64,000 bases of DNA from Hypanus sabinus (GCF_030144855.1 NC_082709.1:48608001-48672000), one strand, 5' to 3'; positions 4,562 to 61,687 are shown, counted from the first letter of the stretch. Notes: generated from the sequence alone by a model not told the origin. Program-made: numbers and translations.

Positions 4562-6264
4562 TTAGAAGTCCCTCATGCGCCTGAAGGACCCGATCATTGA
4601 GTTGTAGCCACCCCAGTCACTGTATCTCCTGTATTCTCCGGGTCTCAGGAAGTACTGTCGGCCTCTGTAGTTGGGTTGTTCATAGAAAATCCAGTAACCA
4701 TCCATCACCTGACAGGAGTGGATGTCACGGTAACGGAAACGATCGTAGACAGAGGGACAGTCGTCCATGAATTCCATCATCTGCCCTGCAAAGTCAGGCC
4801 TCTCATAAATCCTCATCCTGTAGTTTCCTCCTCGGTACTAGAATAGAAAAAAAGCACTGTTTTAGTAATAATCTCTTGATGATCATTCACTCATTAAGCA
4901 TTACATCGGAACACCAATTCAGTCTTCAATGGGAAATAAAGTTAGATGCAATGTAAACATTTCATTAATTATCTGTCTCCAATTGGCACTGCTGCTGGTT
5001 CAAACATAAGTTAAAGGAAAACAAAGCAGAAAATGAGAAATTCTGCTTTTAGAGTGTAGAACATAGAACAGTAGAGTACAAGAATAGGGCTTTTGGCCCA
5101 AAATGTTCTGCTGAACCAATTAAATTAATAAATTTAAATATAGTTGACTATTCAAATTAAATCCCTTCTGCTTAAGTAACATCCATATCCTTCAACTTCC
5201 CTTACATGCATGTGCCTAAGAATCTCTTAAAAACCCCTGATGAACCTGCCTCTAACATTACCCTGGCAGCGTATCCAAACACCCATCCCTCTCTGTGTAT
5301 AAAACTTGCCCTTCACATCTCCTTTGAACATACACCCATTCACATTAAATGCATGTCCTCTGGTATCTCATATTTTAACCATGAGAAAAAGATACCGTCT
5401 ATCTATTCTATTTATGTCTTAAAAACCTCTGTGATATCCACTCAACCTCTGCCACTCCAGAGAAAACAACACAAGGTTGTCCAACATCTCGTTCTAGCAT
5501 ATGCCCTCGAATCGAGAAGCATCCTTCTACACCCTCTCCAACGTCTCGACATACTTCCTGGAATGGCGTGACCAAAATTGTAAGCAATAAGCCAGATGAC
5601 AAAAAAAGACAAGAAGCTGTTGGTGAAGGTCCCAGCATTCTTATCTCTTGCCTCTCTCAGTAACCTTGGTTATATCTGTCCGGCTCTGGGGACTTAGGTG
5701 CATTAATGCTCATTAAGAGACCCAACACTACCTCCTTCTTTACAAAGATGTCATGCAGAACCTGCGCAAATCTTTAAGTAAGTAGGGGCTCAGCTGTGCT
5801 TTCTTCGTAATTGCACAACACTGCATTTAAATAAAAGAGCTTATTTAATACCTATTAGACAATTGCTGGCATCTTCAGAGACAAACTGCAAAGGATCAAA
5901 TACCCTGAAAAAAAATAGAAACGTACGTATGTGAAGCTGCGACAGGACCTGATTGTGTCATTGAATCCCATCCAGCGCTGGTAGTCAGGATACTCTCCCC
6001 TGCTCAGGACATACTGGTATCCCATGTAGTTGGGTCTCTCATACAGCACCCACCAGTCACTCTCAACACGGATGGAGTTACAGCGGCTGAAGTAAGGGGA
6101 GAGGTCAGCACAGTCGGAGCTGCACTCATAGTGCCGACCCTGGAAGTTCCTGTCCTCGTAGAAGATGATCTGTGGGAAGAAACATATCTGTGTTAATAGT
6201 TGCTCAGGTGTTCATGGAGAATTCTCATTTAATTCATTTACTGAGTAGTCCTTGCCTTTCCCAT
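4562..6264 (-). CDS. cryg: Gamma-crystallin copy 1 (175 aa, intact); exons 6264-6256, 6169-5927, 4837-4562
   Basis: Spliced translation MGK|[81 protein letters not shown]|[23 protein letters not shown]...GSFRRMRDF*. Four Greek-key motifs and the classic 3-exon gamma-crystallin layout with phase-0 introns (GC-AG 86 nt, GT-AG 1089 nt). Orthologue not assignable from sequence alone. Confidence 0.96.
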
Positions 6265-6321
6265 TTTGAACACAGTGAGTCTGGTAACCAGCTGAACGTT
6301 TCACTGCCGAACACAAGCTGG

Positions 6322-6329
6322 TATTTATA
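6322..6329 (-). promoter_or_regulatory. TATA box, copy 1
   Basis: TATAAATA about 58 nt upstream of the ATG; identical in all seven copies. Confidence 0.85.
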
Positions 6330-7029
6330 TGCAGGGTCGAAAGGCCTCACTAGGCAGTTTCTTGTTGTTCTGGTGACATCAGCAAAACACAGCAAAATCC
6401 TTTTTTTCATTTATTGTAGAAAAACAACAGAAAGACATTTGTTGCATAGATCCTTTCAGTTGTGCTTTCTTATCATTTTAATTGTCATTTGAACCAAACA
6501 GTTCAGGAAAATTCACAGCTACGTATCACCCTGGTCCATTTATCTGGGTCAATGTTGCATTTTGGCTCTTTCCCAAATGCCTAAATTGAGGACATACCAT
6601 ATTAAACTGAGAAATACTTTTTGAAAATCCACCTATACTGCTTTTTCTCCACAGTACTAATCAGCTACTTCTATTATTTCATCAACTAGTTCAGCCAGAT
6701 GAGACAAACATGATTTCTCTTCAATAATATCTGCTGCCTCTCCCTTCATAACCCCCTTGATCCTCCAAGTGAGAGTTAATATTGCCTTTCACAGTGGTTC
6801 CTTGTAGTTTCCCACCTCCGGTATTCATTATGTTTGCCCACTTCTCTTGCTGAACACATTTAACATTCAAAGCCTTCCACTCTCCTGTCAGTGAAGAACT
6901 GTACACTACACTCAGCATTTCAATTACCTCCACACTCTGGATTTCCTCACCATCCTTGTGATACTCTATTCTCTTTAATTCATTTTCTGATGGAAGAAAG
7001 GCCAATAATCAATAATTCACTCTGATTGC

Positions 7030-16151: not shown

Positions 16152-17835
16152 TTAGAAGTCCCTCATGCGCCTGAAGGATCCGATCATTGAGTTGTAGCCA
16201 CCCTAGTCACTGTATCTCCTGTATTCCCCGGGTCTCAGGAAGTACTGTCGGCCTCTGTAGTTGGGATGTTCATAGAAGATCCAGTAACCATCCATCACCT
16301 GACAGGAGTGGATGTCACAGTAACGGAAACGATCGTAGAGAGAGGGACAGTCGTCCATGAATTCCATCATCTGTCCTCCAAAGTCGGGCCTCTCGTAAAT
16401 CCTCATCCTGTAGTTTCCACCTCAGTACTGGAATAGGAAGTACAAAGATATAGTAGTGACGTTTTGTAGAGTATTCACTCATTATAGACTACATCTGAAC
16501 AGCCAATTCACTAACTTCAATGGGAAATAAAGTCAGGTGCAATTTGATCATTTTATTCACTATCTGCCTCAATGATGCCTCCAACCAGCATGTAGCTGGT
16601 TCAAACATAAGTTAAAGAAAAACACAGGAAAAATTCATTTAGAATATAGAACGTTGGACATAAGAGCACAGGAATAGGACCTTTGGCCCACAGTGTTCTG
16701 TCCAACCAATTACATTAGTAAATTTGAATTGAGTGAGCTGTTTGATTTAAATGGCCAACTAAACGGATTGCTTCAGCTTAAACAATGTCCATATCCTACC
16801 ACTTCCCTCACATTCGTGTGCCTACCTAAATATCTTTTAGAATTCCCTAATGTATCTGCTTCTAACATCACCCCGAGCAGTGCATTCCCAGCCCCCACAA
16901 CTCTCTGTGGGTAAAAAAAACTTGCTCCACAATCTCATTTGAATTTATACTCTTTCGCCTTCTATGCACGTCCTGTGATAGGAGATATTTTAACATGGGA
17001 AAAAGTTACTGTCTGTCTACTCTATCTATGCACCTCATAAACCTCTGTCAGATCTCCCTTCAACCTCTGCCGCTCCAGGGAAAACAAATCAAGTTTGCCC
17101 GACCTCTCATTATAGCACAAACCCTCTAAGCCAGGCAACGTCCTGATAAGCCTCTTCCACACTCTCTCCAAAGTTTTGACATCATTCCTGTAATCGTGTG
17201 ACCAAAATTGAATGCAAAACTCTAGATGATTAGAAAAGACATGATGTTGTTGGTCAAGGTTCCAGCAATCTCATCTCTTGCCTCTCTCAATAACCTGGTG
17301 TATATCCCATCAGACCCTGGGGACTTATTCACTTTAATGCTCTTTATGCGACACACAACTGCTTCCTTCATCTTTAAATACGCATATTAATACACTCGGA
17401 CATATTTAATACCTATTAGGCACTTGCTAGGCAAATTCTCCACTTTCAGAGCCAATCTGCAGAAGATCAAATACCCTGAAAAAAAATAGAAACATACGTA
17501 TGGGAAGCTGCGACAGGACTTGACACAGTCATTGAATCCCATCCAGCGCTGGTAGTCAGGATACTCTCCCCTTCTCAGGACATACTGGTATCCCATGTAG
17601 TTGGGTCTCTCGTACAGCACCCACCAATCACTCTCAACACGGATGGAGTTACAGCGGCTGAAGTAAGGGGAGAGGTCAGCACAGTCGGAGCTGCACTCAT
17701 AGTGCCAACCCTGGAAGTTCCTGTCCTCGTAGAAGATGATCTGTGGGAAGAAACATATCTGTGTTAACAGTTGCTCAGGTATTCATGGAGAATTCTCCTT
17801 TAGTTCATGAACTGAGCAGTCCTTGCCTTTCCCAT
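16152..17835 (-). pseudogene. cryg: Gamma-crystallin copy 2, probable pseudogene; exons 17835-17827, 17740-17498, 16427-16152
   Basis: Exon sizes and splice sites match the paralogs. Codon 2 of exon 3 is TGA (16424-16422; CGA in the others) and the Trp of SDWGG is TAG (16205-16203). Also R14W (CGG>TGG) in exon 2 and R>C in exon 3. Confidence 0.9.
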
Positions 17836-25526: not shown

Positions 25527-27139
25527 TTAGAAGTCCCTCATGCGCCTGAAGGACCCAACAGTTGAGCTGTAGCCGCCCCAGTCACTGTATCTCCTGTATT
25601 CCCCGGGTCTCAGGAAGTACTGTTGGCCTCTGTAGTTGGGATGTTCATAGAAGATCCAGTAACCATCCATCACCTGACAGGAGTGGATGTCACGGCAACG
25701 GAAATGATCGTAGACAGAGGGACTGTCGTCCATGAATTCCATCATTTGCCCTGCAAAGTCAGGCCTCTCGTAAATCCTCATCCTGTAGTTTCCACCTCGG
25801 TACTGGAGTAGGAGAAACACACTTTTAATAATGTTGTTTTGTAGAGCCTTCAATGATTGTATACTACACCTGAACACCAATTCATAAACTGGACATTGAC
25901 TTCAATGGAAAATGAAGTCAGATGCAAATTGATCATTTCACTATCTGCCCCAATAACTGGGTTTGCTGCTGGTTCTAACATACGTCAAAGGAAAGCAAAG
26001 GGGAAAATATGAGAAATTCTGCATATAAACAGTAGAGCACATGACACGTCCTTTGGCCCATAATATTGTGCCCAACCAATTAAATTTGGAAATTTAAATT
26101 TAGCTGGCTATTTAAATTTAACCTAAACAGATCCTTCCTACTTAAACACTGTCCATATCCTTCGACTTCCCTCAAATTCATGTGACTAAACATCTCTTAT
26201 AAGTTACTAATGTATCTGCATGCAACATCATCCCAGGCTGCACATTTCAGGCATTCTGTGTAAAAAATAGTTTGCTCCTCACATCTCCTTTGAACTTCTA
26301 CTATCTCACCCTAAATGCACGTCCTCTGGTATTAGATAATTTCACCATCTGTCTACTCTAACTATGACTTTCATAAACTTATAAACTCCTCTCAAACTCT
26401 GCCACTCCAGAGAAAACTGCAATACACCAGATGGTGAGAAAAGACATGAAGATTTTGGTCAAAGTCTCAGCAATCTCTCACAATAAGCTGGTATATATTA
26501 ATGCTCATTAAGAGATCCAATATTACCTCTTCCTTCACATTGAAATGCCCTAACATATTAATAAACCTGGGCATATTTAATATCCATTATGCATTTCTAC
26601 ACAAAATCTCCATCTTCAGAGATGAACTGCAAAGGATCAAATTCCCTAAAAAAATTTGAACTTACATACTACTTCCTCCTTCATCTCAAAATGCCCAAGC
26701 ATTTGAATAAACTCGTCCATTAGGCACTTGATAGGCCAATTCCCCATTTTCAGAGCCAAACAGAAAAAAGTCAAATGCCCTGAAAAAACATTGAAACTTA
26801 CATATGGGTAACTGCGACAGGACCTGATTGTGTCATTCAATCCCATCCAGCGTTGGTAGTCAGGATAATCTCCCCTGCTCAGGACATACTGGTATCCCAT
26901 GTAGTTGGGTCTCTCGTACAACACCCACCAGTCACTCTCAACACGGATGGAGTTACAGCGGCTGAAGTAAGGGGAGAGGTCGCCACAGTCGGAGCTGCAC
27001 TCATAGTGCCGACCCTGGAAGTTCCTGTCCTCGTAGAAGATGATCTGTGGGAAGAAACATATCTGTGTTAATAGTTGCTCAGGTGTTCATGGAGAATTCT
27101 CATTTAGTTCATTTACTGAGTAGTCCTTGCCTTTCCCAT
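25527..27139 (-). CDS. cryg: Gamma-crystallin copy 3 (175 aa, intact); exons 27139-27131, 27044-26802, 25802-25527
   Basis: Open frame across three exons; GC-AG 86-nt and GT-AG 999-nt introns; ends GSFRRMRDF*. Confidence 0.95.
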
Positions 27140-32645: not shown

Positions 32646-34356
32646 TCAGAAGTCCCTCATGCGCCTGAAGGACCCAACCATTGAGTTGTAGCCGCCCCAG
32701 TCACTGTATTTCCTGTATTCCCCGGGTCTCAGGAAGTACTGTCGGCCTCTGTAGTTGGGTTGTTCATAGAAGATCCAGTAACCATCCATCACATGACAGG
32801 AGTGGATGTCACGGTAACGGAAACGATCGTAGACAGAGGGACAGTCCTCCATGAATTCCATCATCTGCCCCTCAAAGTCAGGCCTTTCATAAATCTTCAT
32901 TTTGTAGGTCCCCCCTCGGTACTGGAATAGATTTAAAAAAGCAGTTTTACTCATGATGTTTGACAGATCATTCACTCATTGTACACGACATCTGAACATC
33001 AATTCATAAACTGAACACTGACTTCAACGGGAGTTAAAGTCAGATGCAAATTGATCATTTCACTTACTACCTGTCTTAAAGATGCCTCCAACTGGCATTG
33101 CTGCTGGTTCTAACATAAGGTAAAGGAAAACTCAGGGAAAAATATGAGAAATTCTGCATTTAGAACATGAAGAGAGAACAGTAGACCATAGGAACAAGCC
33201 ATTTGGCCTACAAAGTTGTGCAAAACCAACTAAATTAGTAAATCTAAATTTAGATGGCTATTTAAGTTAAACAGCCAACTCAGTTAATCCCTTCTGCTTA
33301 AACAATGTCCATACCCTTTCACTTCCCTCACATTCATGTGTGTAACTAAACATCTCTCAAAACCCTCTAATGCGTTGGTCTCTGACGCCAGCCCGGGCAG
33401 TGCTTTCCAGGTACCCATCACTCTGTGTGAGAACTTGCTACTCACATCTCCTTTGAACTTACACCACTCACCTTATATGCATGCTCTCTGGTATGAGATA
33501 TTTTAACTCTGGGAAAAAGATCCTGTTTGTTTACTCTATCTATACCCCTCATAATCTTACAAAACTCTGTCAGGCCTCCCCTTAGCCTCCACCACTCCAT
33601 AGAAAGTAACTCAAGCTTGCCCAACCTCTTGTTATAGTACATGCCATCTAAACTGGGCAGCGTCCTGAAAAGCCTCCTCTGCACCCTCTCCAAACTCTTG
33701 ATATCATTCCTGTAACAGTGTGACCAAAACTGCATGCAATAATCCAGATGGTTAGAAAAGACGTAAAGATTTTGGTCAATATTCCAGTTATCCAATGTCT
33801 TGCCTCTCTCAATAACCTGAGGTACATTTCATGAGGCCCTGAAGACATATCCACCTGAATGGTCTTTAAGAGACTCAACACTGTCTCCTCATTTACATTG
33901 AAATACCAGACCCTATTAATGTACTTGGACATATTTGATACCCATTAGGTACTTGTTGGGCAAATGCTCCATTTTCAGGACCAAACAGCAAAATATCTGA
34001 ACAAAAATTGAAACTTACATATGGGTAACTGTGACAGGACTTGACACAGTCATTGAATCCCATCCAGCGCTGGTAGTCAGGATACTCTCCCCTTCTCAGG
34101 ACGTACTGGTATCCCATGTAGTTGGGTTTCTCGTACACCACCCACCAGTCACTCTCAACACGGATGGAGTTACAGCGGCTGAAGTAAGAGGAGAGGTCGG
34201 CACAGTCGGAGCTGCACTCATAGTGCCGACCCTGGAAGTTCCTGTCCTCGTAGAAGATGATCTGTGGGAAGAAGCATATCTGTGTTAATAGTTGCTCAGG
34301 TGTTCATGGAGAATTCTCATTTAGTTCATTTACTGAGTAGTCCTTGCCTTTCCCAT
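32646..34356 (-). CDS. cryg: Gamma-crystallin copy 4 (175 aa, intact, most divergent exon 3); exons 34356-34348, 34261-34019, 32921-32646
   Basis: Open frame; exon 3 [30 protein letters not shown]...; TGA stop; introns 86 nt (GC-AG) and 1097 nt. Confidence 0.95.
33160..33910 (-). mobile_element. CR1 remnant within intron 2 (copy 4 shown; present in intron 2 of all seven copies)
   Basis: [34 protein letters not shown] (ORF 33442-33795) fused to an upstream ORF2 piece ([15 protein letters not shown]). Confidence 0.85.
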
Positions 34357-40572: not shown

Positions 40573-42155
40573 TTAGAAGTCCCTCATGCGCCTGAAGGAC
40601 CCGATCATTGAGTTGTAGCCGCCCCAGTCACTGTATCTCCTGTATTCCCCGGGTCTCAGGAAGTACTGTCGGCCTCTGTAGTTGGGTTGTTCATAGAAGA
40701 TCCAGTAACCATCCATCACCTGACAGGAGTGGATATCACGGTAACGGAAATGATCATAGACAGAGGGACAGTCATCCATGAATTCCATCATCTGCCCTCC
40801 AAAGTCAGGCCTCTCATAAATCCTCGTCCTGTAGTTTCCACCTCGGTACTGGAATAGGAAACACAGAATTTTAGCAGTGATCTTTTGTAGATCATTCACT
40901 CATTATACACTACATTTGAGCACTATTTTACAGTCTGGACATTGAGTTAAATGGGAAGTAAAGTCAGATGTAATTTGATCATTTCATTAATTATCTGCCT
41001 CAATTGCTGCTGGTTCAAAGGAAGTTAAAGAAGAAGACTATAAAAATAAATGCGACAAATTCTGCATTTAGAGCATAAAACATAGAGCAGCAGACTCTTT
41101 GGCCCTCACTAAATTAGAAAATTTAAAGTTCGTTGGCTATTTAAATTAAACAGACAACTAAACTAATTCCTTCTGCTTAAACAGCATCCATATCCTTCCA
41201 TCTCCCTCACATTCATGAGCTTATCCAAACAGCTATTAAAAGTCCCAAATGTATCTTCCTCTATCATCATTCCGAGCAGTGTATTCCAGGCACCCGCTTC
41301 TCTCTGTATAAAAAACTTGCCCCTCACATCTCCTTTGAACTCACACCCTCTCACGTTATATGTATGTCCTCTGGTATGAGATATTTCAAATCTGGGAAAA
41401 AAAGATGCTGTCTGTCTACTCTAACGATGCCTCTCATAAATATCTATCAGATATCCCTCTGAAACTCCACCAACACAAGTTTTTCTGATCTCTCGTTATA
41501 GCGCAATCTCTCTAATCCAGGCAGCATTCTGATAAGCCTCTTCTGCGATAAGCCTTTCCAATGTCTCACCATCATTCATACAACAGTGAGAACAAAACTG
41601 TATGCAATACTCCAGATGTGTAGAAAAGATGTAGAGACTTATCCATCTTATTGCTCTTTAAGAGACTCAACACTACTTCCTATTTCACATCGAAATACCT
41701 GAGCATGTTAATACGCACAGGCATATTTGAAACCCATTAGGCACTTTCTGGGAAATTCTCCATCTGTAGAGACAAACTGCAAAAGATCAAATGCCCTGAA
41801 AAACATTTGGAACTTACATATGGGTAACTGCGACAGGACCTGATTGTGTCATTGAATCCCATCCAGCGCTGGTAGTCAGGATACTCTCCCCTGCTCAGGA
41901 CATACTGGTATCCCATGTAGTTGGGTCTCTCGTACAACACCCACCAGTCACTCTCAACACGGATGGAGTTACAGCGGCTGAAGTAAGGGGAGAGGTCGGC
42001 ACAGTCAGAGCTGCACTCATAGTGCCGACCCTGGAAGTTCCTCTCCTCGTAGAAGATGATCTGTGGGAAGAAACATATCTGTGTTAATAGTTGCTCAGGT
42101 GTTCATGGAGAATTTTCATTTAGTTCATTTACTGAGTAGCCCTTGCCTTTCCCAT
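40573..42155 (-). CDS. cryg: Gamma-crystallin copy 5 (175 aa, intact); exons 42155-42147, 42060-41818, 40848-40573
   Basis: Open frame; introns 86 nt (GC-AG) and 969 nt. Confidence 0.95.
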
Positions 42156-43065: not shown

Positions 43066-45564
43066 TGCATAGAAACAACATAGGTAGGAAAAGGGAGGAG
43101 GTCCTGAAAACAGACTACAGGGAGTTAGGAAGGAAGTTGAGAAGCAGCACCTCCAAGGTAATAATCTCCGGATTATTGCCTGTGCCATGTGACAGTGAGT
43201 ATAGGAATAGAGCGAGGTGGAAGATAAATGCATGGCTGAGAGTTTGAAACGGAGGGCAAGGTTTCAGATTTCTGGATCATTGGGACCTCTTTTGGGGCAG
43301 GTGTGACCTGTACAATAAGGAGGGTTGCACTTGAATCTGAGGGGGACCAATATCCTGGCAGGGATGTTTGCTAAGGCTACTGGGGAGAGTTTAAACCCAG
43401 AATTGCTGGGGTTGGGAACCAAACTGAAGAGACAAAGGAAGGGATGGTTGGCTCACAAATAAAGAAAGCTTGTAGGCAGTGTGAGAGGGAAGATAGGCAG
43501 GTGATAGAGAAGGGGTGTTCTCAGACTGATGGTTTGAGATGTTAATGCAAGGAGTATTATAAACAAAGTGGATGAGCTTAGAGCATGGAACAGTACTTGG
43601 AGCTATAATGTTGTGGCCATTACAGAGACTTGGATGGCTCAGGGACAGGAATGGTTAATTCAAGTGCCGGGTTTTAGATGTTTCAGAAAGGACAAGAAGG
43701 AAGGCAGAAGAGGTGGGCATGACACTGTTGATCAGAGATAGTGTCACTGCTGCAGAAAAGGTGGGCGTCATGGAGGGATTGTCTATGGAGTCTCTGTGGG
43801 TGGAAGTTAGAAATAGGAATGGGTCAATATTTTTTGAAGATGTGACTAAACACATTGATGAAGGTGCAGCAGTAGATGTAGTGTATATGGATTTCAGCAA
43901 GGCATTTGATAAGGTACTCCATGCAAGGCTTATTGAGAAAGTAAGGAGGCATGGGATCCAAGGGGACATTGCTTGGGATCCAGAAATGGCTTGCCCACAG
44001 CAGGCAAAGAATGGTTATAGATGGGTCATATTCTGCATGGAAGTTGGTGACCAGTGGTGTGCCTCAGGGATCTGTTTTGGGATCATTTCTCATCATGAGT
44101 TTTCACTATGGAAAAGGACCTTGGTGATTGTAGGAATGACTTACAGCAGACTGAAAAGCTTAAGCATAAAGAAATTAAGAAAGAGGATGTGCTGGAGCTT
44201 TTGGAAATCTTCAAGTTGGATAGGTCACCAGGACTGGATGAGATGCACCCCAGGCTACTGTGGAAGCTGAGGGAGGAGATTGTTGAGCCTCTGACAATGC
44301 TCTTTGCATCATCAATGGGGACAGGAGAGGTTCCGGAGGATTGGTGGGTTGCAGATGTTGTTCTCTTATTCGAGAAAGGGAGTAGAGATAGCCCAGGAAA
44401 TTATAGACCAGTGAGTCTTAATTCAGTGGTTGGTAAGCTGATGGAGAAATTCCTGAAAGGCAGGAGTTATGAACATTTGGAGAGGCATAATATGATTTGG
44501 AATAGTCAGCATGCTTTTGTCAAAGGCAGGTTGTGCCTTACGAGCCTGATTGAATTTTTTGAAGATGTGACTAAACACATTGATGAAGGTACAGCAGTAG
44601 ATGTAGTGTATATGGATTTCAGCAAGGCATTTGATAAGGCACCCCATGCAAGGCTTATTGAGAAGGTAGGGAGGCATGGGATTCAAGGGGACATTACTTT
44701 GTGGATCCAGAACTGGCTTGCCTACAGAGGGCAAAGGGTGGTTGTAGATGGGTCATATTCTGCATGGAGGTTGGCGACCAGTGGTGTGCCTCAGGGATCT
44801 GATCTGGGACCCCTTCTCATTGTGAGTTTTATAAATGACCTGGATGAGGAAGTGGAGGGATGGGTTAGTAAATTTGCTGATGACCCAAAGGTTGGGGGTG
44901 TTGTGGATTGTGCGGAGGGCTGTCAGAGGTCACAGCAGGTCATTGATAGGATGCAAAACTGGGCTGAGAAGTGGCAAATGGAGTTCAACCCAGACAAGAG
45001 TGAGGTGGCTCATTTTGGTAGGTCAAATATGATGGCAGAATATGGTATTAATGGTGAGACTCTTGGTAGGATCAGAGGGAACTTGGGGTCCGTGTGCATA
45101 GGACACTCAAAGCTGCTGTGCAGTTTGGCTGTGTAGTTAAGAAGGCATACAGTGTATTGGCCTTCATCAACCATGGGATTGAGTTCAAGAGCTGAGAGGT
45201 AATGTCATAGATGTATAAGATCCGAGTCAGACCCCACTTGCAGTATTGTGCTCATTTCTGGTCACCTCACTACAGGAAGGATGTGGAAACTATAGAAAGG
45301 ATGCAGAGAAAATTTACAAGGATGTTACCTAGATTGGGGAGAATAGGTTGAGTGAACTCAGCCTTTTCTCCTTGGAGAGATGAAGGATTGGAGGTGATCT
45401 GATAGAGATGTATAAGATGATGAGAGGCATTAGAGAGGCATGAGAAAAACAGAGGACTATGTGTAACCCTAAGAAATTTCTAAAGTAAGTACATGTTCGG
45501 TACAGTATTGTGGGCTGAAAGGCCTATATTGTGCTGTAGGTTTTCTATGTTATTATGTTCTATG
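43066..45564 (+). mobile_element. Rearranged CR1 LINE (ORF1 esterase fragment, endonuclease start, RT, 3' tail) inserted in Rex1
   Basis: IGRKREEVLKTDYRELGRKL..KVIISGLLPVP (SGNH-type ORF1); NARSI..VAITETW; 342-aa RT ORF 44108-45136; (TTCTATG)-like tail. Confidence 0.9.
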
Positions 45565-49108: not shown

Positions 49109-50806
49109 TTAGAAGTCCCTCATGCACCTGAAGGACCCGATCATTGAGTTGTAGCCGCCCCAGTCACTGTATCTCCTGTATTCCCCGGGTCTCAGGAAGT
49201 ACTGTCGGCCTCTGTAGTTGGGATGTTCATAGAAGATCCAGTAACCGTCCATCACCTGACAGGAGTGGATGTCACGGTAACAGAAGCGATCATAGACAGA
49301 GGGACAATCGTCCATGAATTCCATCATCTGTCCTCCAAAGTCAGGCCTCTCGTAAATCCTCATCCTGTAGTTTCCACCTCGGTACTGGAGTAGGAAACAC
49401 AGAGTTTTAGTCATGATGTTTTACAGAGTATTCACCTGCTATACACGATATCTCAAAACTCATTCACAAACTGGTGACTAACTTCAATGGGAAATAAAGT
49501 CAGATGGAATTTGATCATTCCATTAATTATCTGTCTCAGATATCCCTTTGACCAGCTTTGCTGCTGGTTCCAATAGAAGTTAAAGAAAAAGACTGTAAAA
49601 ATAAATAGGAGGAATTCTGCATTTAGAAGAAAGAACATAAAGCATAGGAAAAGGTCCTTGGGCCCACACTGTTGTGCTCAAACAATTAAATTAGTAAATT
49701 CAAATTTAGTTGGCTATTTGAGTTAAATGGTCAAATAAACTAATCCCTTCTGCCTAAACAATGTCCATCTCCTTCTATCTCTCTTACAATCATGTTCCTA
49801 TTTAGCCATCTATTAAAAGTCCCTGATGTACCTGCCTCTAATAACATCCTACTGCCACCCACCTCTCTCTATGTAAAAAATTCTATCTCACTCTCCTTTG
49901 AACACACACCCTCTCAACTAAAATGTATATTCTTTGGTATGAGATATTTAAACCCTGGGGAAAAGATACTGTCTGTCTTCTACATCTATGCCTCCCATAA
50001 TCTTATAAACCTCTATCAGATCTCACCTCGACCTCCGCTGCTCCAGAGAAAAATAATTCAAGTTGTTCTGCCTCTCAGTACAGCACATGCCCTCTAAACC
50101 AGGCAGCATCCTGAAAAGCCTCCTTTGCACCATCTCCAAACATTCAACATCATTCCTATAATGGTGTGAGCAAAATTACATGTAATATTCCAGAGAGCTA
50201 GAAAAGACATAAAGATCTTGATCAAGGTTCCAACTATCTCATCTCTTGCCTCTCTCAATAACCAGGGATATTGTCCATCAGGCCTTGGAACATATCCACC
50301 TTAATGCTCCTTAAGAAACTCACCACTACCTCCTCCTTCACCTCAAAATACCCTTGCAATTTAAGACATTCAGGCATTTTTGTAACAATTAGGCACTAGC
50401 AAGACAAATTCTCCATTTTCAGAGCCAAGCTAAAAAAAAATCAAACTCCTTGAAAATGTGAAACTTACATATGGGTAACTGCGACAGGACCTGATTGTGT
50501 CATTCAATCCCATCCAGCGCTGGTAGTCAGGATACTCTCCCCTGCTCAGGACATACTGGTATCCCATGTAGTTGGGTTTCTCGTACAACACCCACCAGTC
50601 ATTCTCAACACGGATGGAGTTACAGCGGCTGAAATAAGGGGAGAGGTCGGCACAGTCGGTGCTGCACTCATAGTGCCGACCCTGGAAGTTCCTGTCCTCG
50701 TAGAAGATGATCTGTGGGAAGAAACATATCTGTGTTAATAGTTGCTCAGGTGTTCATGGAGAATTCTCATTTAATTCATTTACTGAGTTGTCCTTGCCTT
50801 TCCCAT
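49109..50806 (-). CDS. cryg: Gamma-crystallin copy 6 (175 aa, intact); exons 50806-50798, 50711-50469, 49384-49109
   Basis: Open frame; introns 86 nt (GC-AG) and 1084 nt; two Arg>Cys changes in exon 3 (RFCY, SFRCM). Confidence 0.94.
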
Positions 50807-60012: not shown

Positions 60013-61687
60013 TTAGAAGTCCCTCATGCGCCTGAAGGACCCGATCATTGAGTTGTAGCCGCCCCAGTCGCTGTATCTCCTGTATTCCCCGGGTCTCAGG
60101 AAGTACTGTTGGCCTATGTAATTTGGATGTTCATAGAAGATCCAGTAACCATCCATCACCTGACAGGAGTGGATGTCACGGTAACGGAAACGATCATAGA
60201 CAGAGGGACAGTTATCTATGAATTCCATCATCTGCCCTCCAAAATCAGGTCTCTCGTAAATCCTCATCCTGTAGTTTCCACCTCGGTACTGGAGTAGGAA
60301 ACACAGAGTTTCAGAAATGATGTTTAGTAAATTGTTCCCTTATTATTCACTACTTCTCAACACTAATTCATAGACTGGACATTGACTTCAATGGAAGTTA
60401 AGGTCAGATGCAATTTGATCATTTCACTTATTGTCTGAATCAGTGATGCCTCCAACCAGCATTGCTGCTGGTTCAAATGGGAGTTAAAAGAAAACACAGC
60501 AAATAATGTGAAAAGCTGCATTTTGAACATAGAATATCGGATATCAGAGAGAGAAACAGGCCCTTGGCCCACAATGTTCGGCCCAACCAATTAAATTAGT
60601 ACATTTAAATTTAGTTGGCTCTTTAAATTAAATGGCAAACTAAACTAATCCCTCCTGTCTGATCAATGTCCATGTCCTTCCACCTCCCTTACTTTCATGT
60701 GCCTATCTGAGAGTCTCTCAAAAGCCCCTGATGAACCTGCCACTAGCAGCACACCAGTCAATGCCTTCCAGACACCCAACCCTCTCTGTGTAAAAGACTT
60801 GCCTCCCAAATCTCCTTTGAACTCACACCCTCTCACCTTAAATGCAGGTCCTGTGATAGGAGATATTTTACCCGTGCCTTTCATAAACTTATAAACCTCT
60901 ATCGGATCTCCCTTCAACCTCCAGGGAAAACAACTCAAGTTTGCTAGACCTCCCAATACAACATATGCCCTCTAAACCAGGCAGCATCCTGATAAGCTTC
61001 TGCTGCACCTTCTAAGTCTAAAGTCTAAACATTCATGTAATGGGGTGATCAAAATTATATGCAATGCACTGGACGGCAAGAAAAGGCATGAAGATGTTGG
61101 ACAGTGCGCCAGGAATCTCATCTCTTGTCTCTCACAATAAGCTGGGGTATATTCCATCTGAACTTGGGGCTTATCTACCCTAACGCTCAATGAGACCCAA
61201 CACGACCTCCTGCTTAACCTCGAAACACCTGAGCATATTTATACACTTAGACATATTTAACACTAATTAGGCACTTGCTAGGCAAATTTTCCATTTTCAG
61301 AGCCAATCTGCAAAAGATCAAATCGCCTGAGAAAAATATTGCAACTTACGTATGGGTAACTGCGACAGGACCTGATTGTGTCATTGAATCCCATCCAGCG
61401 CTGGTAGTCAGGATACTCTCCCCTGCTCAGGACATACTGGTATCCCATGTAGTTGGGTCTCTCGTACAACACCCACCAGTCACTCTCAACACGGATGGAG
61501 TTACAGCGGCTGAAGTAAGGGGAGAGGTCGCCACAGTCGGAGCTGCACTCATAGTGCCGACCCTGGAAGTTCCTGTCCTCGTAGAAGATGATCTGTGGGA
61601 AGAAACATATCTGTGTTAATAGTTGCTCAGGTGTTCATGGAGAATTCTCATTTAGTTCATTTACTGAGTAGCCCTTGCCTTTCCCAT
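60013..61687 (-). CDS. cryg: Gamma-crystallin copy 7 (175 aa, intact); exons 61687-61679, 61592-61350, 60288-60013
   Basis: Open frame; introns 86 nt (GC-AG) and 1061 nt; motif 4 reads PNYIGQQY instead of PNYRGRQY. Confidence 0.94.

What the first reader, a model, noticed from the sequence alone, without database searches (positions are those of the whole stretch)
6170..6255. Non-canonical GC-AG 86-nt first intron fixed in all seven paralogs
Seen: after ATG GGA AAG every copy continues GCAAGG (donor G at 6255, 17826, 27130, 34347, 42146, 50797, 61678), and intron 1 is exactly 86 nt and nearly invariant, unlike intron 2. The nearest GT (+15, CA|GTAAAT) would shift the frame, and retention in copy 1 gives MGKARTTQ*. 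Known: GC donors are rare (about 1% of U2 introns) and usually need a strong exonic AG context, which is present here. Inference: the weak donor is either inherited or homogenised, or it acts as a splicing throttle on very highly expressed lens genes. GT-only gene predictors will miss exon 1.
Basis: partly seen in the sequence, partly recalled or inferred. Interest (0 to 1): 0.7.

Follow-up and report, generated by a model that had tools for sequence, protein, structure and literature searches.

The report
Old GC-AG intron in ray lens genes
All seven tandem gamma-crystallin lens genes in this ray genome window begin with a tiny exon followed by an 86-base intron that starts with GC instead of the usual GT. 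This is a real but known kind of rare intron, inherited from an old shark-and-ray gene lineage, kept uniform by copying between neighbouring genes, and often missed by automatic gene annotation.

Summary
Seven minus-strand gamma-crystallin genes each read ATGGGAAAG|GCAAGG, then an 86-nt intron, then cacag|ATC. Only this junction restores the conserved [14 protein letters not shown] start. One copy (ATG at 17835) is a pseudogene.

Intron 1 is 96-98% identical among copies. Intron 2 is 74% identical and varies in length.

The GC donor is not special to this array. I read AAG|GCAAG in 18 genes from seven elasmobranch genomes: this window, Mobula, Hypanus, Amblyraja, Narcine, Heptranchias and Chiloscyllium. 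GT-type paralogues sit beside GC genes in Amblyraja and Narcine. All sampled genes of Carcharodon, Heterodontus, Callorhinchus and Polyodon were GT.

Promoter and intron-1 similarity split the GC and GT types into old lineages. Exon 2 instead groups by species, which points to gene conversion. In the window, silent sites of exon 2 differ by 2% among paralogues, against 9-11% for an orthologue pair with Mobula and 26% in intron 2. The invariance therefore reflects homogenisation of a roughly 440-bp 5' block.

The "inherited or homogenised" reading is supported. The "splicing throttle" reading has no support and could not be tested. Public gene models of the GC genes do lack the MGK exon. This is a new member of a known kind.

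The parts
6170..6255 (-). Intron 1 of copy 1, 86 nt, GC-AG (AAG|GCAAGG ... cacag|ATC). This is the reported feature.
17741..17826 (-). Intron 1 of copy 2 (the pseudogene), 86 nt, GC-AG. It is 91-93% identical to the other copies.
27045..27130 (-). Intron 1 of copy 3, 86 nt, GC-AG
34262..34347 (-). Intron 1 of copy 4, 86 nt, GC-AG
42061..42146 (-). Intron 1 of copy 5, 86 nt, GC-AG
50712..50797 (-). Intron 1 of copy 6, 86 nt, GC-AG
61593..61678 (-). Intron 1 of copy 7, 86 nt, GC-AG
4562..6264 (-). Gamma-crystallin gene copy 1, ATG to stop: exon 1 CDS 6264-6256 (MGK), exon 2 6169-5927, intron 2 5926-4838 (GTACGT donor), exon 3 4837-4562
16152..17835 (-). Gamma-crystallin pseudogene. It has in-frame stops at 16424-16422 (TGA) and 16205-16203 (TAG), and an R-to-W change at 17707.
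25527..27139 (-). Gamma-crystallin gene copy 3, ATG to stop
32646..34356 (-). Gamma-crystallin gene copy 4, ATG to stop
40573..42155 (-). Gamma-crystallin gene copy 5, ATG to stop
49109..50806 (-). Gamma-crystallin gene copy 6, ATG to stop
60013..61687 (-). Gamma-crystallin gene copy 7, ATG to stop
6324..6329 (-). TATAAA box of copy 1, 65 nt upstream of the ATG. The position is the same in six copies and is -62 in the pseudogene. It implies a first exon of roughly 45 nt.
5927..6364 (-). Homogenised 5' block of copy 1, about -100 to the end of exon 2. It is 93-99% identical among the intact paralogues, and identity drops sharply at the exon 2/intron 2 boundary.

Best explanation
Intron 1 of each gene is a genuine U2-type GC-AG intron that is most likely spliced constitutively. 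The C at position +2 breaks one base pair with U1 snRNA. Every other core position matches the consensus (AAG|GCAAG), which is the usual compensation in GC donors.

The GC state was not fixed in this array. It belongs to an old '5' module' (promoter, 5' UTR, MGK exon, intron 1) that already existed before sharks and rays diverged. A second, GT-type module has persisted alongside it.

The near-invariance and exact length of intron 1 among the seven copies come from gene conversion. Conversion homogenises a contiguous block of about 440 bp, from about -100 to the end of exon 2, and intron 1 is simply carried along inside it.

Shown here: the junction geometry and reading frame, the spread of the GC donor across species, the mosaic phylogenetic signal, and the silent-site pattern. 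Inferred: actual use of the junction in lens mRNA, and that the C is tolerated rather than needed.
For: Junction and frame:
- Seven identical ATGGGAAAG|GCAAGG donors, each followed by an 86-nt intron.
- Among start codons downstream of the TATA box, only this donor with the cacag acceptor gives MGK + [11 protein letters not shown]. No in-frame ATG reads unspliced into exon 2 in any copy.
- Exons 2 and 3 are each one Crystall domain (E 2e-31 and 3e-35).
- The best relatives are elasmobranch gamma-crystallins, many of which begin [11 protein letters not shown].

Age of the GC donor:
- GC donors AAG|GCAAG[G/A/T] were read in Mobula (3 genes), Hypanus (1), Amblyraja (1), Narcine (2), Heptranchias (3) and Chiloscyllium (1).
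- GT donors were read in Carcharodon (2), Amblyraja (1), Narcine (1), Heterodontus (1), Callorhinchus (3) and Polyodon (2).
- On the promoter/5' UTR tree the donor state needs only 2 changes. A single GC clade is not rejected (p-AU 0.23). The GT genes of Carcharodon, Amblyraja and Narcine form a supported clade.
- Intron-1 interiors keep residual similarity within a type across orders (z 2.5-5.5 and 4.4 for GC pairs, 9.2 for a GT pair). Between types there is almost none: z is about 0, apart from one pair at 3.0.

Homogenisation:
- Exon 2 groups by species and rejects a single GC clade (p-AU 5e-5).
- In the window, four-fold sites of exon 2 differ by 2.1% among paralogues and intron 1 by 2.4%. 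The orthologue pair W6264/Mobula L003:2622 differs by 9% at four-fold sites and 11% in intron 2. Paralogues differ by 26% in intron 2.
- The intron-2 tree pairs W6264 with the Mobula gene at 100/100 support and rejects a clade of all window copies (p-AU 0.0005).

No hidden function found in the intron: no RNA structure (z +0.8) and no Rfam family.
Against: - No transcript evidence could be obtained, so use of the junction rests on frame and homology.
- The direct test for concerted evolution of the 5' block across the window/Mobula split is weak. The window copies form one side of a branch with only 66/86 support, and the orthologue clade is not rejected there (p-AU 0.19).
- Identity drops very sharply at the exon boundaries, which also fits selection on the exons.
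- C at +2 was kept in every sampled GC-type gene, across branches on which the intron interior has been randomised. That leaves room for selection on the C.
- Sampling was small and biased: 28 genes, chosen from the top protein hits, out of arrays of 16-41 genes per species.
Confidence: 0.8

Rival explanations
1. The GC donor is kept by selection as a regulatory device. A weak donor would make removal of intron 1 rate-limiting or dependent on lens-fibre factors, acting as a throttle or through regulated intron retention on very highly expressed crystallin genes.
For: - C at +2 is retained in all 18 GC-type genes from seven genomes, although most of the intron interior between distant species is at chance similarity.
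- GC-AG introns are reported to be enriched in first introns, short, conserved, and linked with lower expression and alternative splicing (PMC7242645; PMC2490688).
Against: - GT-type paralogues with an otherwise identical donor (AAG|GTAAGG) coexist in Amblyraja and Narcine.
- The GC type is the amplified type here (seven copies), which is odd for a brake.
- Two pseudogenes (window 17835 and Mobula L003:22949) still carry the GC.
- The C sits in a CpA context, not CpG, so it mutates slowly (general knowledge about methylated vertebrate genomes).
- A rough estimate of my own, not a tool result, puts neutral retention of the C at odds of roughly 0.02-0.2.
- There is no conserved intronic element beyond the splice signals.
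- No expression data were available.
Confidence: 0.12
2. The invariance of intron 1 reflects purifying selection on an element inside the intron, such as a downstream promoter element, an enhancer or a splicing enhancer, rather than gene conversion.
For: - Identity peaks at 98-99% across intron 1 and falls exactly at the exon 2/intron 2 border.
- Intron 1 differs by about 4% between the window and Mobula, against 11% in intron 2.
- A GAATTCTTCA-like stretch recurs in the intron 1 of batoid GC genes.
Against: - Four-fold synonymous sites of the adjoining exon 2 are just as uniform (2.1%) and are more alike among paralogues than between orthologues. That pattern is what conversion predicts and selection on an intronic element does not.
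- The intron interior is at chance similarity between the window and Hypanus or the sharks.
- About 40% of an 86-nt intron is splice signal anyway (my estimate).
Confidence: 0.1
3. The MGK exon is not used. Transcripts would start from distant upstream exons or inside the intron, as several public gene models propose, so there is no GC-AG intron.
For: Public models for GC-type genes begin with far-upstream exons or with ATGs inside the intron, for example P0003, P0006, P0008, P0010 and P0013.
Against: - A TATAAA box at -65, a good start-codon context, and the ATGGGAAAG exon are conserved in every GC and GT gene, from chimaera and paddlefish to rays.
- In the window no ATG inside the intron is in frame.
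- The odd N-termini of the models differ between species. They read straight through the polypyrimidine tract (...FPQ), which is typical of a predictor working around a junction it cannot accept.
Confidence: 0.04

Closest known systems
Evolutionarily conserved GC-AG first introns of vertebrate protein-coding genes, e.g. ABI3BP intron 1 (PMC7242645)
   Same: It is a U2-type GC donor in the first intron. The intron is short and the remaining donor positions match the consensus. The donor is conserved across very distant species.
   Different: Here the donor sits in a tandemly amplified, gene-converting lens crystallin family. GC-type and GT-type paralogues coexist, and the first exon codes for only three residues.
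Mammalian (rat, mouse) gamma-crystallin gene cluster.
   Same: The gene plan is the same: a 9-nt coding exon 1 (MGK), a first intron of about 100 nt, one two-motif domain per exon, a tandem array, and homogenisation of the 5' part.
   Different: Donor type in mammals was not checked here. By instruction, no human sequence was consulted.
Chondrichthyan gamma-crystallin expansions described for the catshark: 41 genes, with species-specific clades in skate, great white shark and elephant shark (PMC11979771)
   Same: It is the same gene family and the same kind of dense cluster, with pseudogenes among the copies.
   Different: That paper reads species-specific clades as recent duplication. Intron 2 here shows duplications older than the window/Mobula split, so part of that pattern may be gene conversion. 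Splice-donor type was not among the passages I retrieved from that paper.
C. elegans let-2 intron 10 GC donor, as cited in PMC2490688
   Same: It has a conserved C at +2 of a donor whose other positions are strong.
   Different: In let-2 the GC is needed for developmentally regulated alternative exon use. No alternative exon exists here, and no regulation has been shown.

Membership tests
U2-type GC-AG intron | GC at intron +1/+2 and AG at the 3' end, at the only junction that restores the conserved reading frame | tested here: met
U2-type GC-AG intron | Other donor positions close to the U1-complementary consensus (AG|GCAAG) | tested here: met
   AAG|GCAAG in all 7 window copies and in all 11 GC genes of the other species
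U2-type GC-AG intron | Not U12-type, i.e. no RTATCCTT donor | tested here: met
   The donor is GCAAGG. A pyrimidine tract (tttcttccc) precedes the AG.
U2-type GC-AG intron | The junction is used in mature mRNA | not testable with these tools
   No vertebrate transcript collection was on hand. By instruction, the joined exon model was not searched.
Vertebrate gamma-crystallin gene | Two beta/gamma-crystallin (Greek key) domains, one per large exon | tested here: met
   Pfam PF00030 with E 2e-31 (exon 2) and 3e-35 (exon 3)
Vertebrate gamma-crystallin gene | Three exons, a 9-nt coding exon 1 (MGK), and phase-0 introns | tested here: met
   The same plan is seen in Callorhinchus and Polyodon.
Vertebrate gamma-crystallin gene | Closest relatives are named gamma-crystallins | tested here: met
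   85-94% identity to elasmobranch 'gamma-crystallin S-1-like' proteins
Regulatory (alternative-splicing or throttle) GC donor | C at +2 conserved beyond neutral expectation in orthologues | tested here: inconclusive
   18 of 18 GC-type genes keep the C, but the copies are not independent and the sample is small.
Regulatory (alternative-splicing or throttle) GC donor | Alternative isoforms, intron retention or lower output tied to the GC | not testable with these tools
   No RNA-seq was available.
Mirtron or structured intronic RNA | A stable hairpin or a match to a known RNA family within the intron | tested here: not met
   MFE -7 kcal/mol with z +0.8. No Rfam match in the intron. The one weak hit in the scanned stretch (E 0.25) lies in exon 2 on the opposite strand and is far below the family's threshold.

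The most novel reading that the evidence does not exclude
The C at +2 is under purifying selection in an amplified elasmobranch gamma-crystallin lineage that predates the shark/ray split (some hundreds of millions of years, by general knowledge). A deliberately sub-optimal first-intron donor would tune or gate splicing of these extremely abundant lens mRNAs, for example through detained-intron control during fibre-cell differentiation. The GT-type paralogues would be the untuned counterpart.
Probability: 0.12. Interest if true: 0.6.

Novelty: new member of a known kind. Interest (0 to 1): 0.33.

Why it matters
Practical value: public gene models for many elasmobranch gamma-crystallins carry wrong N-termini. 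They use ATGs inside the intron or far-upstream exons in place of MGK. All five GC-type genes whose models I checked have this error. Allowing AAG|GCAAG donors would correct a whole gene family in several genomes.

Evolutionary value: the family is a clean natural experiment. GC-type and GT-type paralogues have near-identical coding exons, lie side by side in Amblyraja and Narcine, and are presumably expressed in the same tissue. This could show whether a GC donor costs anything in a very highly expressed gene.

The mosaic signal also matters. The 5' module is old, the exons are homogenised, and intron 2 keeps the orthology. 'Species-specific clades' of crystallin genes may therefore partly reflect gene conversion rather than recent duplication.

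Tried and rejected
Hypotheses tested and rejected:
- Mirtron or structured RNA in the conserved intron: no structure (z +0.8) and no Rfam family.
- U12-type intron: the donor does not fit.
- Other donors and acceptors. The +15 GT shifts the frame with the normal acceptor. It is in frame only with an AG 20 nt inside exon 2, which would remove the conserved IIFYEDR strand. The 53-nt and 68-nt alternatives use the same GC donor, are very short and have no pyrimidine tract. ATGs upstream of the TATA box were discounted.
- GC-biased gene conversion as the cause: intron 1 is AT-rich, so I gave this little weight and did not test it formally.

Tests that were uninformative or weak:
- The exon 2 tree as a guide to orthology groups genes by species because of conversion.
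- The AU test for concerted evolution of the 5' block against the orthologue pair was not significant (p 0.19).

Searches and look-ups that gave nothing:
- A literature search for gamma-crystallin plus GC-AG found nothing relevant.
- The look-up for Polypterus P0057 found no record.
- One look-up timed out and was repeated.
- All 12 contig look-ups were then spent, so Carcharodon GC-type genes, Rhincodon, Pristis and non-human mammals could not be checked.

Steps left out on purpose:
- The costly representative-protein search was not run because the family was already clear.
- The joined (spliced) protein was never built for a search or printed. Exons were searched separately by reference.
- The word search used a continuous window ORF that starts at exon 2 (window:26649-27044:-, region 1-81).
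- No human contig was fetched or compared.

Full report
**What is there**

The window holds exactly seven exon-2 and seven exon-3 copies of a gamma-crystallin gene, all on the minus strand (tblastn).

Each gene has this layout:
- a TATAAA box 65 nt upstream of the ATG (62 nt in the pseudogene)
- a coding exon 1 of nine bases, ATGGGAAAG (MGK)
- an 86-nt intron that begins GCAAGG and ends ttcttcccacag
- a 243-nt exon 2
- a canonical GT donor (GTAAGT, GTATGT or GTACGT)
- an intron 2 of 969-1097 nt
- a 276-nt exon 3 including the stop codon
- a polyadenylation signal about 51 nt after the stop

Exons 2 and 3 each match the Pfam beta/gamma-crystallin domain, with E 2e-31 and 3e-35. The 15-mer that spans the start codon and the donor occurs seven times, against 0.16 expected by chance.

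One copy (ATG at 17835) is a pseudogene. It has two in-frame stops in exon 3, at 16424-16422 and 16205-16203, and an R-to-W change in exon 2. It still keeps the GC donor and the 86-nt length.

**Is the GC-AG junction the real one?**

I enumerated every GT or GC donor and every AG acceptor around the intron.
- Among start codons downstream of the TATA box, only AAG|GCAAGG joined to cacag|ATC gives the N-terminus [14 protein letters not shown].
- Many relatives begin with exactly this sequence ([11 protein letters not shown]).
- No ATG inside the intron is in frame in any copy.
- Retaining the intron stops translation after eight codons.
- The +15 GT is out of frame with the normal acceptor. It is in frame only with an AG 20 nt inside exon 2, which would delete the first conserved beta-strand.

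The donor pairs with U1 at -2, -1, +1, +3, +4 and +5, and is mismatched at +2. This is the usual compensated GC donor (background: PMC2490688). It does not look like a U12-type donor. No transcripts were available, so in vivo use of the junction remains an inference.

**Whose genome is it?**

The best protein matches are elasmobranch 'gamma-crystallin S-1-like' models, led by Mobula birostris at 94%. The Mobula locus L003 carries three genes whose promoter and intron 1 are almost identical to the window's.

Intron 2 pairs window copy 1 with Mobula gene L003:2622 at 88.8% identity. All paralogous pairs are about 74% identical. The window therefore comes from a ray related to Mobula birostris but distinct from it.

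**How old is the GC donor?**

I fetched genomic loci for eleven related proteins and read the exon 1/intron 1 boundary directly (sequences read).

| Donor type | Genes |
|---|---|
| GC, AAG\|GCAAG[G/A/T] | window 7, Mobula 3, Hypanus 1, Amblyraja 1, Narcine 2, Heptranchias 3, Chiloscyllium 1 |
| GT | Carcharodon 2, Amblyraja 1, Narcine 1, Heterodontus 1 (the weak GTTGGG), Callorhinchus 3, Polyodon 2 |

All 18 GC donors keep AAG|GCAAG. Three of the ten GT donors depart from the core consensus.

Evidence that the two types are old lineages:
- On a tree of the promoter and 5' UTR (110 columns, with the donor itself left out), the donor state needs two changes, and one change is not excluded.
- On that tree the GT genes of Carcharodon, Amblyraja and Narcine form a supported clade. 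A single GC clade is not rejected (p-AU 0.23).
- Intron-1 interiors keep residual similarity within a type across orders. Window or Mobula against the Amblyraja or Narcine GC genes gives z 2.5-5.5. Hypanus against a Heptranchias GC gene gives z 4.4. The Amblyraja and Narcine GT genes give z 9.2.
- Between types the similarity is about zero, apart from one pair at z 3.0.

The simplest reading is two old 5' modules, GC-type and GT-type. Both were present before sharks and rays split. GT is probably ancestral, because the sampled chimaera and paddlefish genes are all GT. The sample is small and was picked from the top protein hits.

**Why is intron 1 nearly invariant here?**

Mean pairwise identity among the seven copies:

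| Region | Identity |
|---|---|
| Intron 1 | 95.9% (97.6% without the pseudogene) |
| Exon 2 | 95.5% |
| Exon 3 | 93.6% |
| 200 nt upstream of the ATG | 87.5% |
| Intron 2 | 74.4% |

A sliding profile shows one continuous block, from about -100 to the end of exon 2, at 93-99% identity. Identity drops abruptly into intron 2.

Silent sites give the same picture:

| Comparison | Difference |
|---|---|
| Four-fold sites of exon 2, among paralogues | 2.1% |
| Intron 1, among intact paralogues | 2.4% |
| Four-fold sites of exon 2, orthologue pair with Mobula | 9% (2 of 22) |
| Intron 2, orthologue pair with Mobula | 11% |
| Intron 2, among paralogues | 26% |

The intron-2 tree joins the orthologue pair at 100/100 support and rejects a clade of all window copies (p-AU 0.0005). 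The duplications are therefore older than the species split, yet the 5' block is more alike within the genome than between orthologues. That is the signature of gene conversion.

Across species the same process shows in exon 2. It groups by species, and the GC and GT genes of Narcine and of Amblyraja are 96% identical there. Exon 2 rejects a single GC clade (p-AU 5e-5).

There are caveats. The 5'-block tree separates window from Mobula copies with only 66/86 support, and it does not reject the orthologue pair (p 0.19). The sharp exon borders would also fit selection.

The intron has no RNA structure (z +0.8) and no Rfam match. Its interior is at chance similarity to Hypanus and to the sharks. 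I therefore see no sign of a deeply conserved intronic element.

**The throttle idea**

Nothing here supports it, and it could not be tested.

Points against it:
- GT-type paralogues with the otherwise identical donor AAG|GTAAGG exist beside GC genes in Amblyraja and Narcine.
- The GC type is the amplified one here.
- Two pseudogenes (window 17835 and Mobula L003:22949) keep the GC.

Points that leave it open:
- The C has been retained in every sampled GC-type gene, across long branches.
- The literature links GC-AG first introns with regulation (PMC7242645).

My rough estimate of neutral retention of a non-CpG C that can only change to T puts the odds between about 0.02 and 0.2. This is an inference, not a computed result. 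I give selection for a regulatory role about 12%.

**Annotation**

The public models fetched for five GC-type genes all lack MGK (P0003, P0006, P0008, P0010, P0013). They start at an ATG inside the intron and read through the pyrimidine tract (...[11 protein letters not shown]), or they borrow a far-upstream exon.

Of four GT genes, two have the correct start. By my count of the N-termini listed, about 21 of 34 elasmobranch models in the top 120 hits lack an MGK-like start. My choice of loci was biased towards odd N-termini.

**Comparison with what is known**

GC-AG introns make up about 0.8% of introns in protein-coding genes. They are enriched in first introns, are shorter than GT-AG introns, and are often conserved over long spans of evolution (PMC7242645). 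GC donors show compensating consensus at the other positions, and GT-to-GC switches are documented (PMC2490688).

Large gamma-crystallin clusters in cartilaginous fishes have been described (PMC11979771). I found no paper that mentions this donor.

The finding is a new member of a known kind. It is useful for annotation and as a natural experiment, but it is not surprising to a specialist.

**Limits kept**

Exons were searched separately, by reference. No human contig was fetched or compared.

Noticed in passing
window 16152-17835 (-): Copy 2 of the array is a pseudogene. It has a CGA-to-TGA stop at 16424-16422, a TGG-to-TAG stop at 16205-16203, and an R-to-W change at 17707. Its intron 1 is the most diverged (91-93% identity), but it keeps the GC donor and the 86-nt length.
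   Followed up: yes
L003:22949 onward (Mobula birostris): The third Mobula gene reads out of frame partway through exon 3, so it is probably a pseudogene. It also still carries the GC donor.
   Followed up: partly
window, about 500-700 nt upstream of each ATG (e.g. 6764-6964 for copy 1): This is a second block of raised paralogue identity (0.88-0.94), separated from the promoter by less conserved DNA. It could be an upstream enhancer or a shared repeat.
   Followed up: no
window 6330-6400 (-) and the same region in all loci: Several promoter motifs are conserved across elasmobranch genes: the TATAAATA box, a GGCCTTTC motif about 15 nt upstream of it in GC-type genes, an AACAA[A/G]G (Sox-like) site, and in copy 1 a TGCTGA..GTCA Maf-like element. 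GT-type genes instead share AACAAAGG[C/T]ATTCTCT.
   Followed up: partly
window 44108-45136 (+): A 342-aa ORF with a reverse-transcriptase domain (Pfam RVT_1, E 7e-27) lies between copies 5 and 6. It is a retroelement remnant in the spacer.
   Followed up: partly
L002, L004, L005, L006, L010 (public gene models P0006, P0010, P0013, P0011, P0008): Public protein models for elasmobranch gamma-crystallins start at ATGs inside the intron or at distant upstream exons. Their N-termini end ...FPQ where they have read through the acceptor tract. This looks like systematic mis-annotation of the MGK exon.
   Followed up: yes
L010 and L004 (Narcine, Amblyraja): GC-type and GT-type genes of one species are about 96% identical in exon 2, but their promoters and intron 1 are unrelated. 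Conversion tracts therefore stop at the intron 1/exon 2 border between the two types. 'Species-specific clades' of crystallin genes in published trees may partly reflect this.
   Followed up: partly
L005:15500-15590 (Heptranchias): The third Heptranchias GC-type gene has lost the TATA box region (acatatgaag in place of catataaata). It may be weakly expressed or dying.
   Followed up: no
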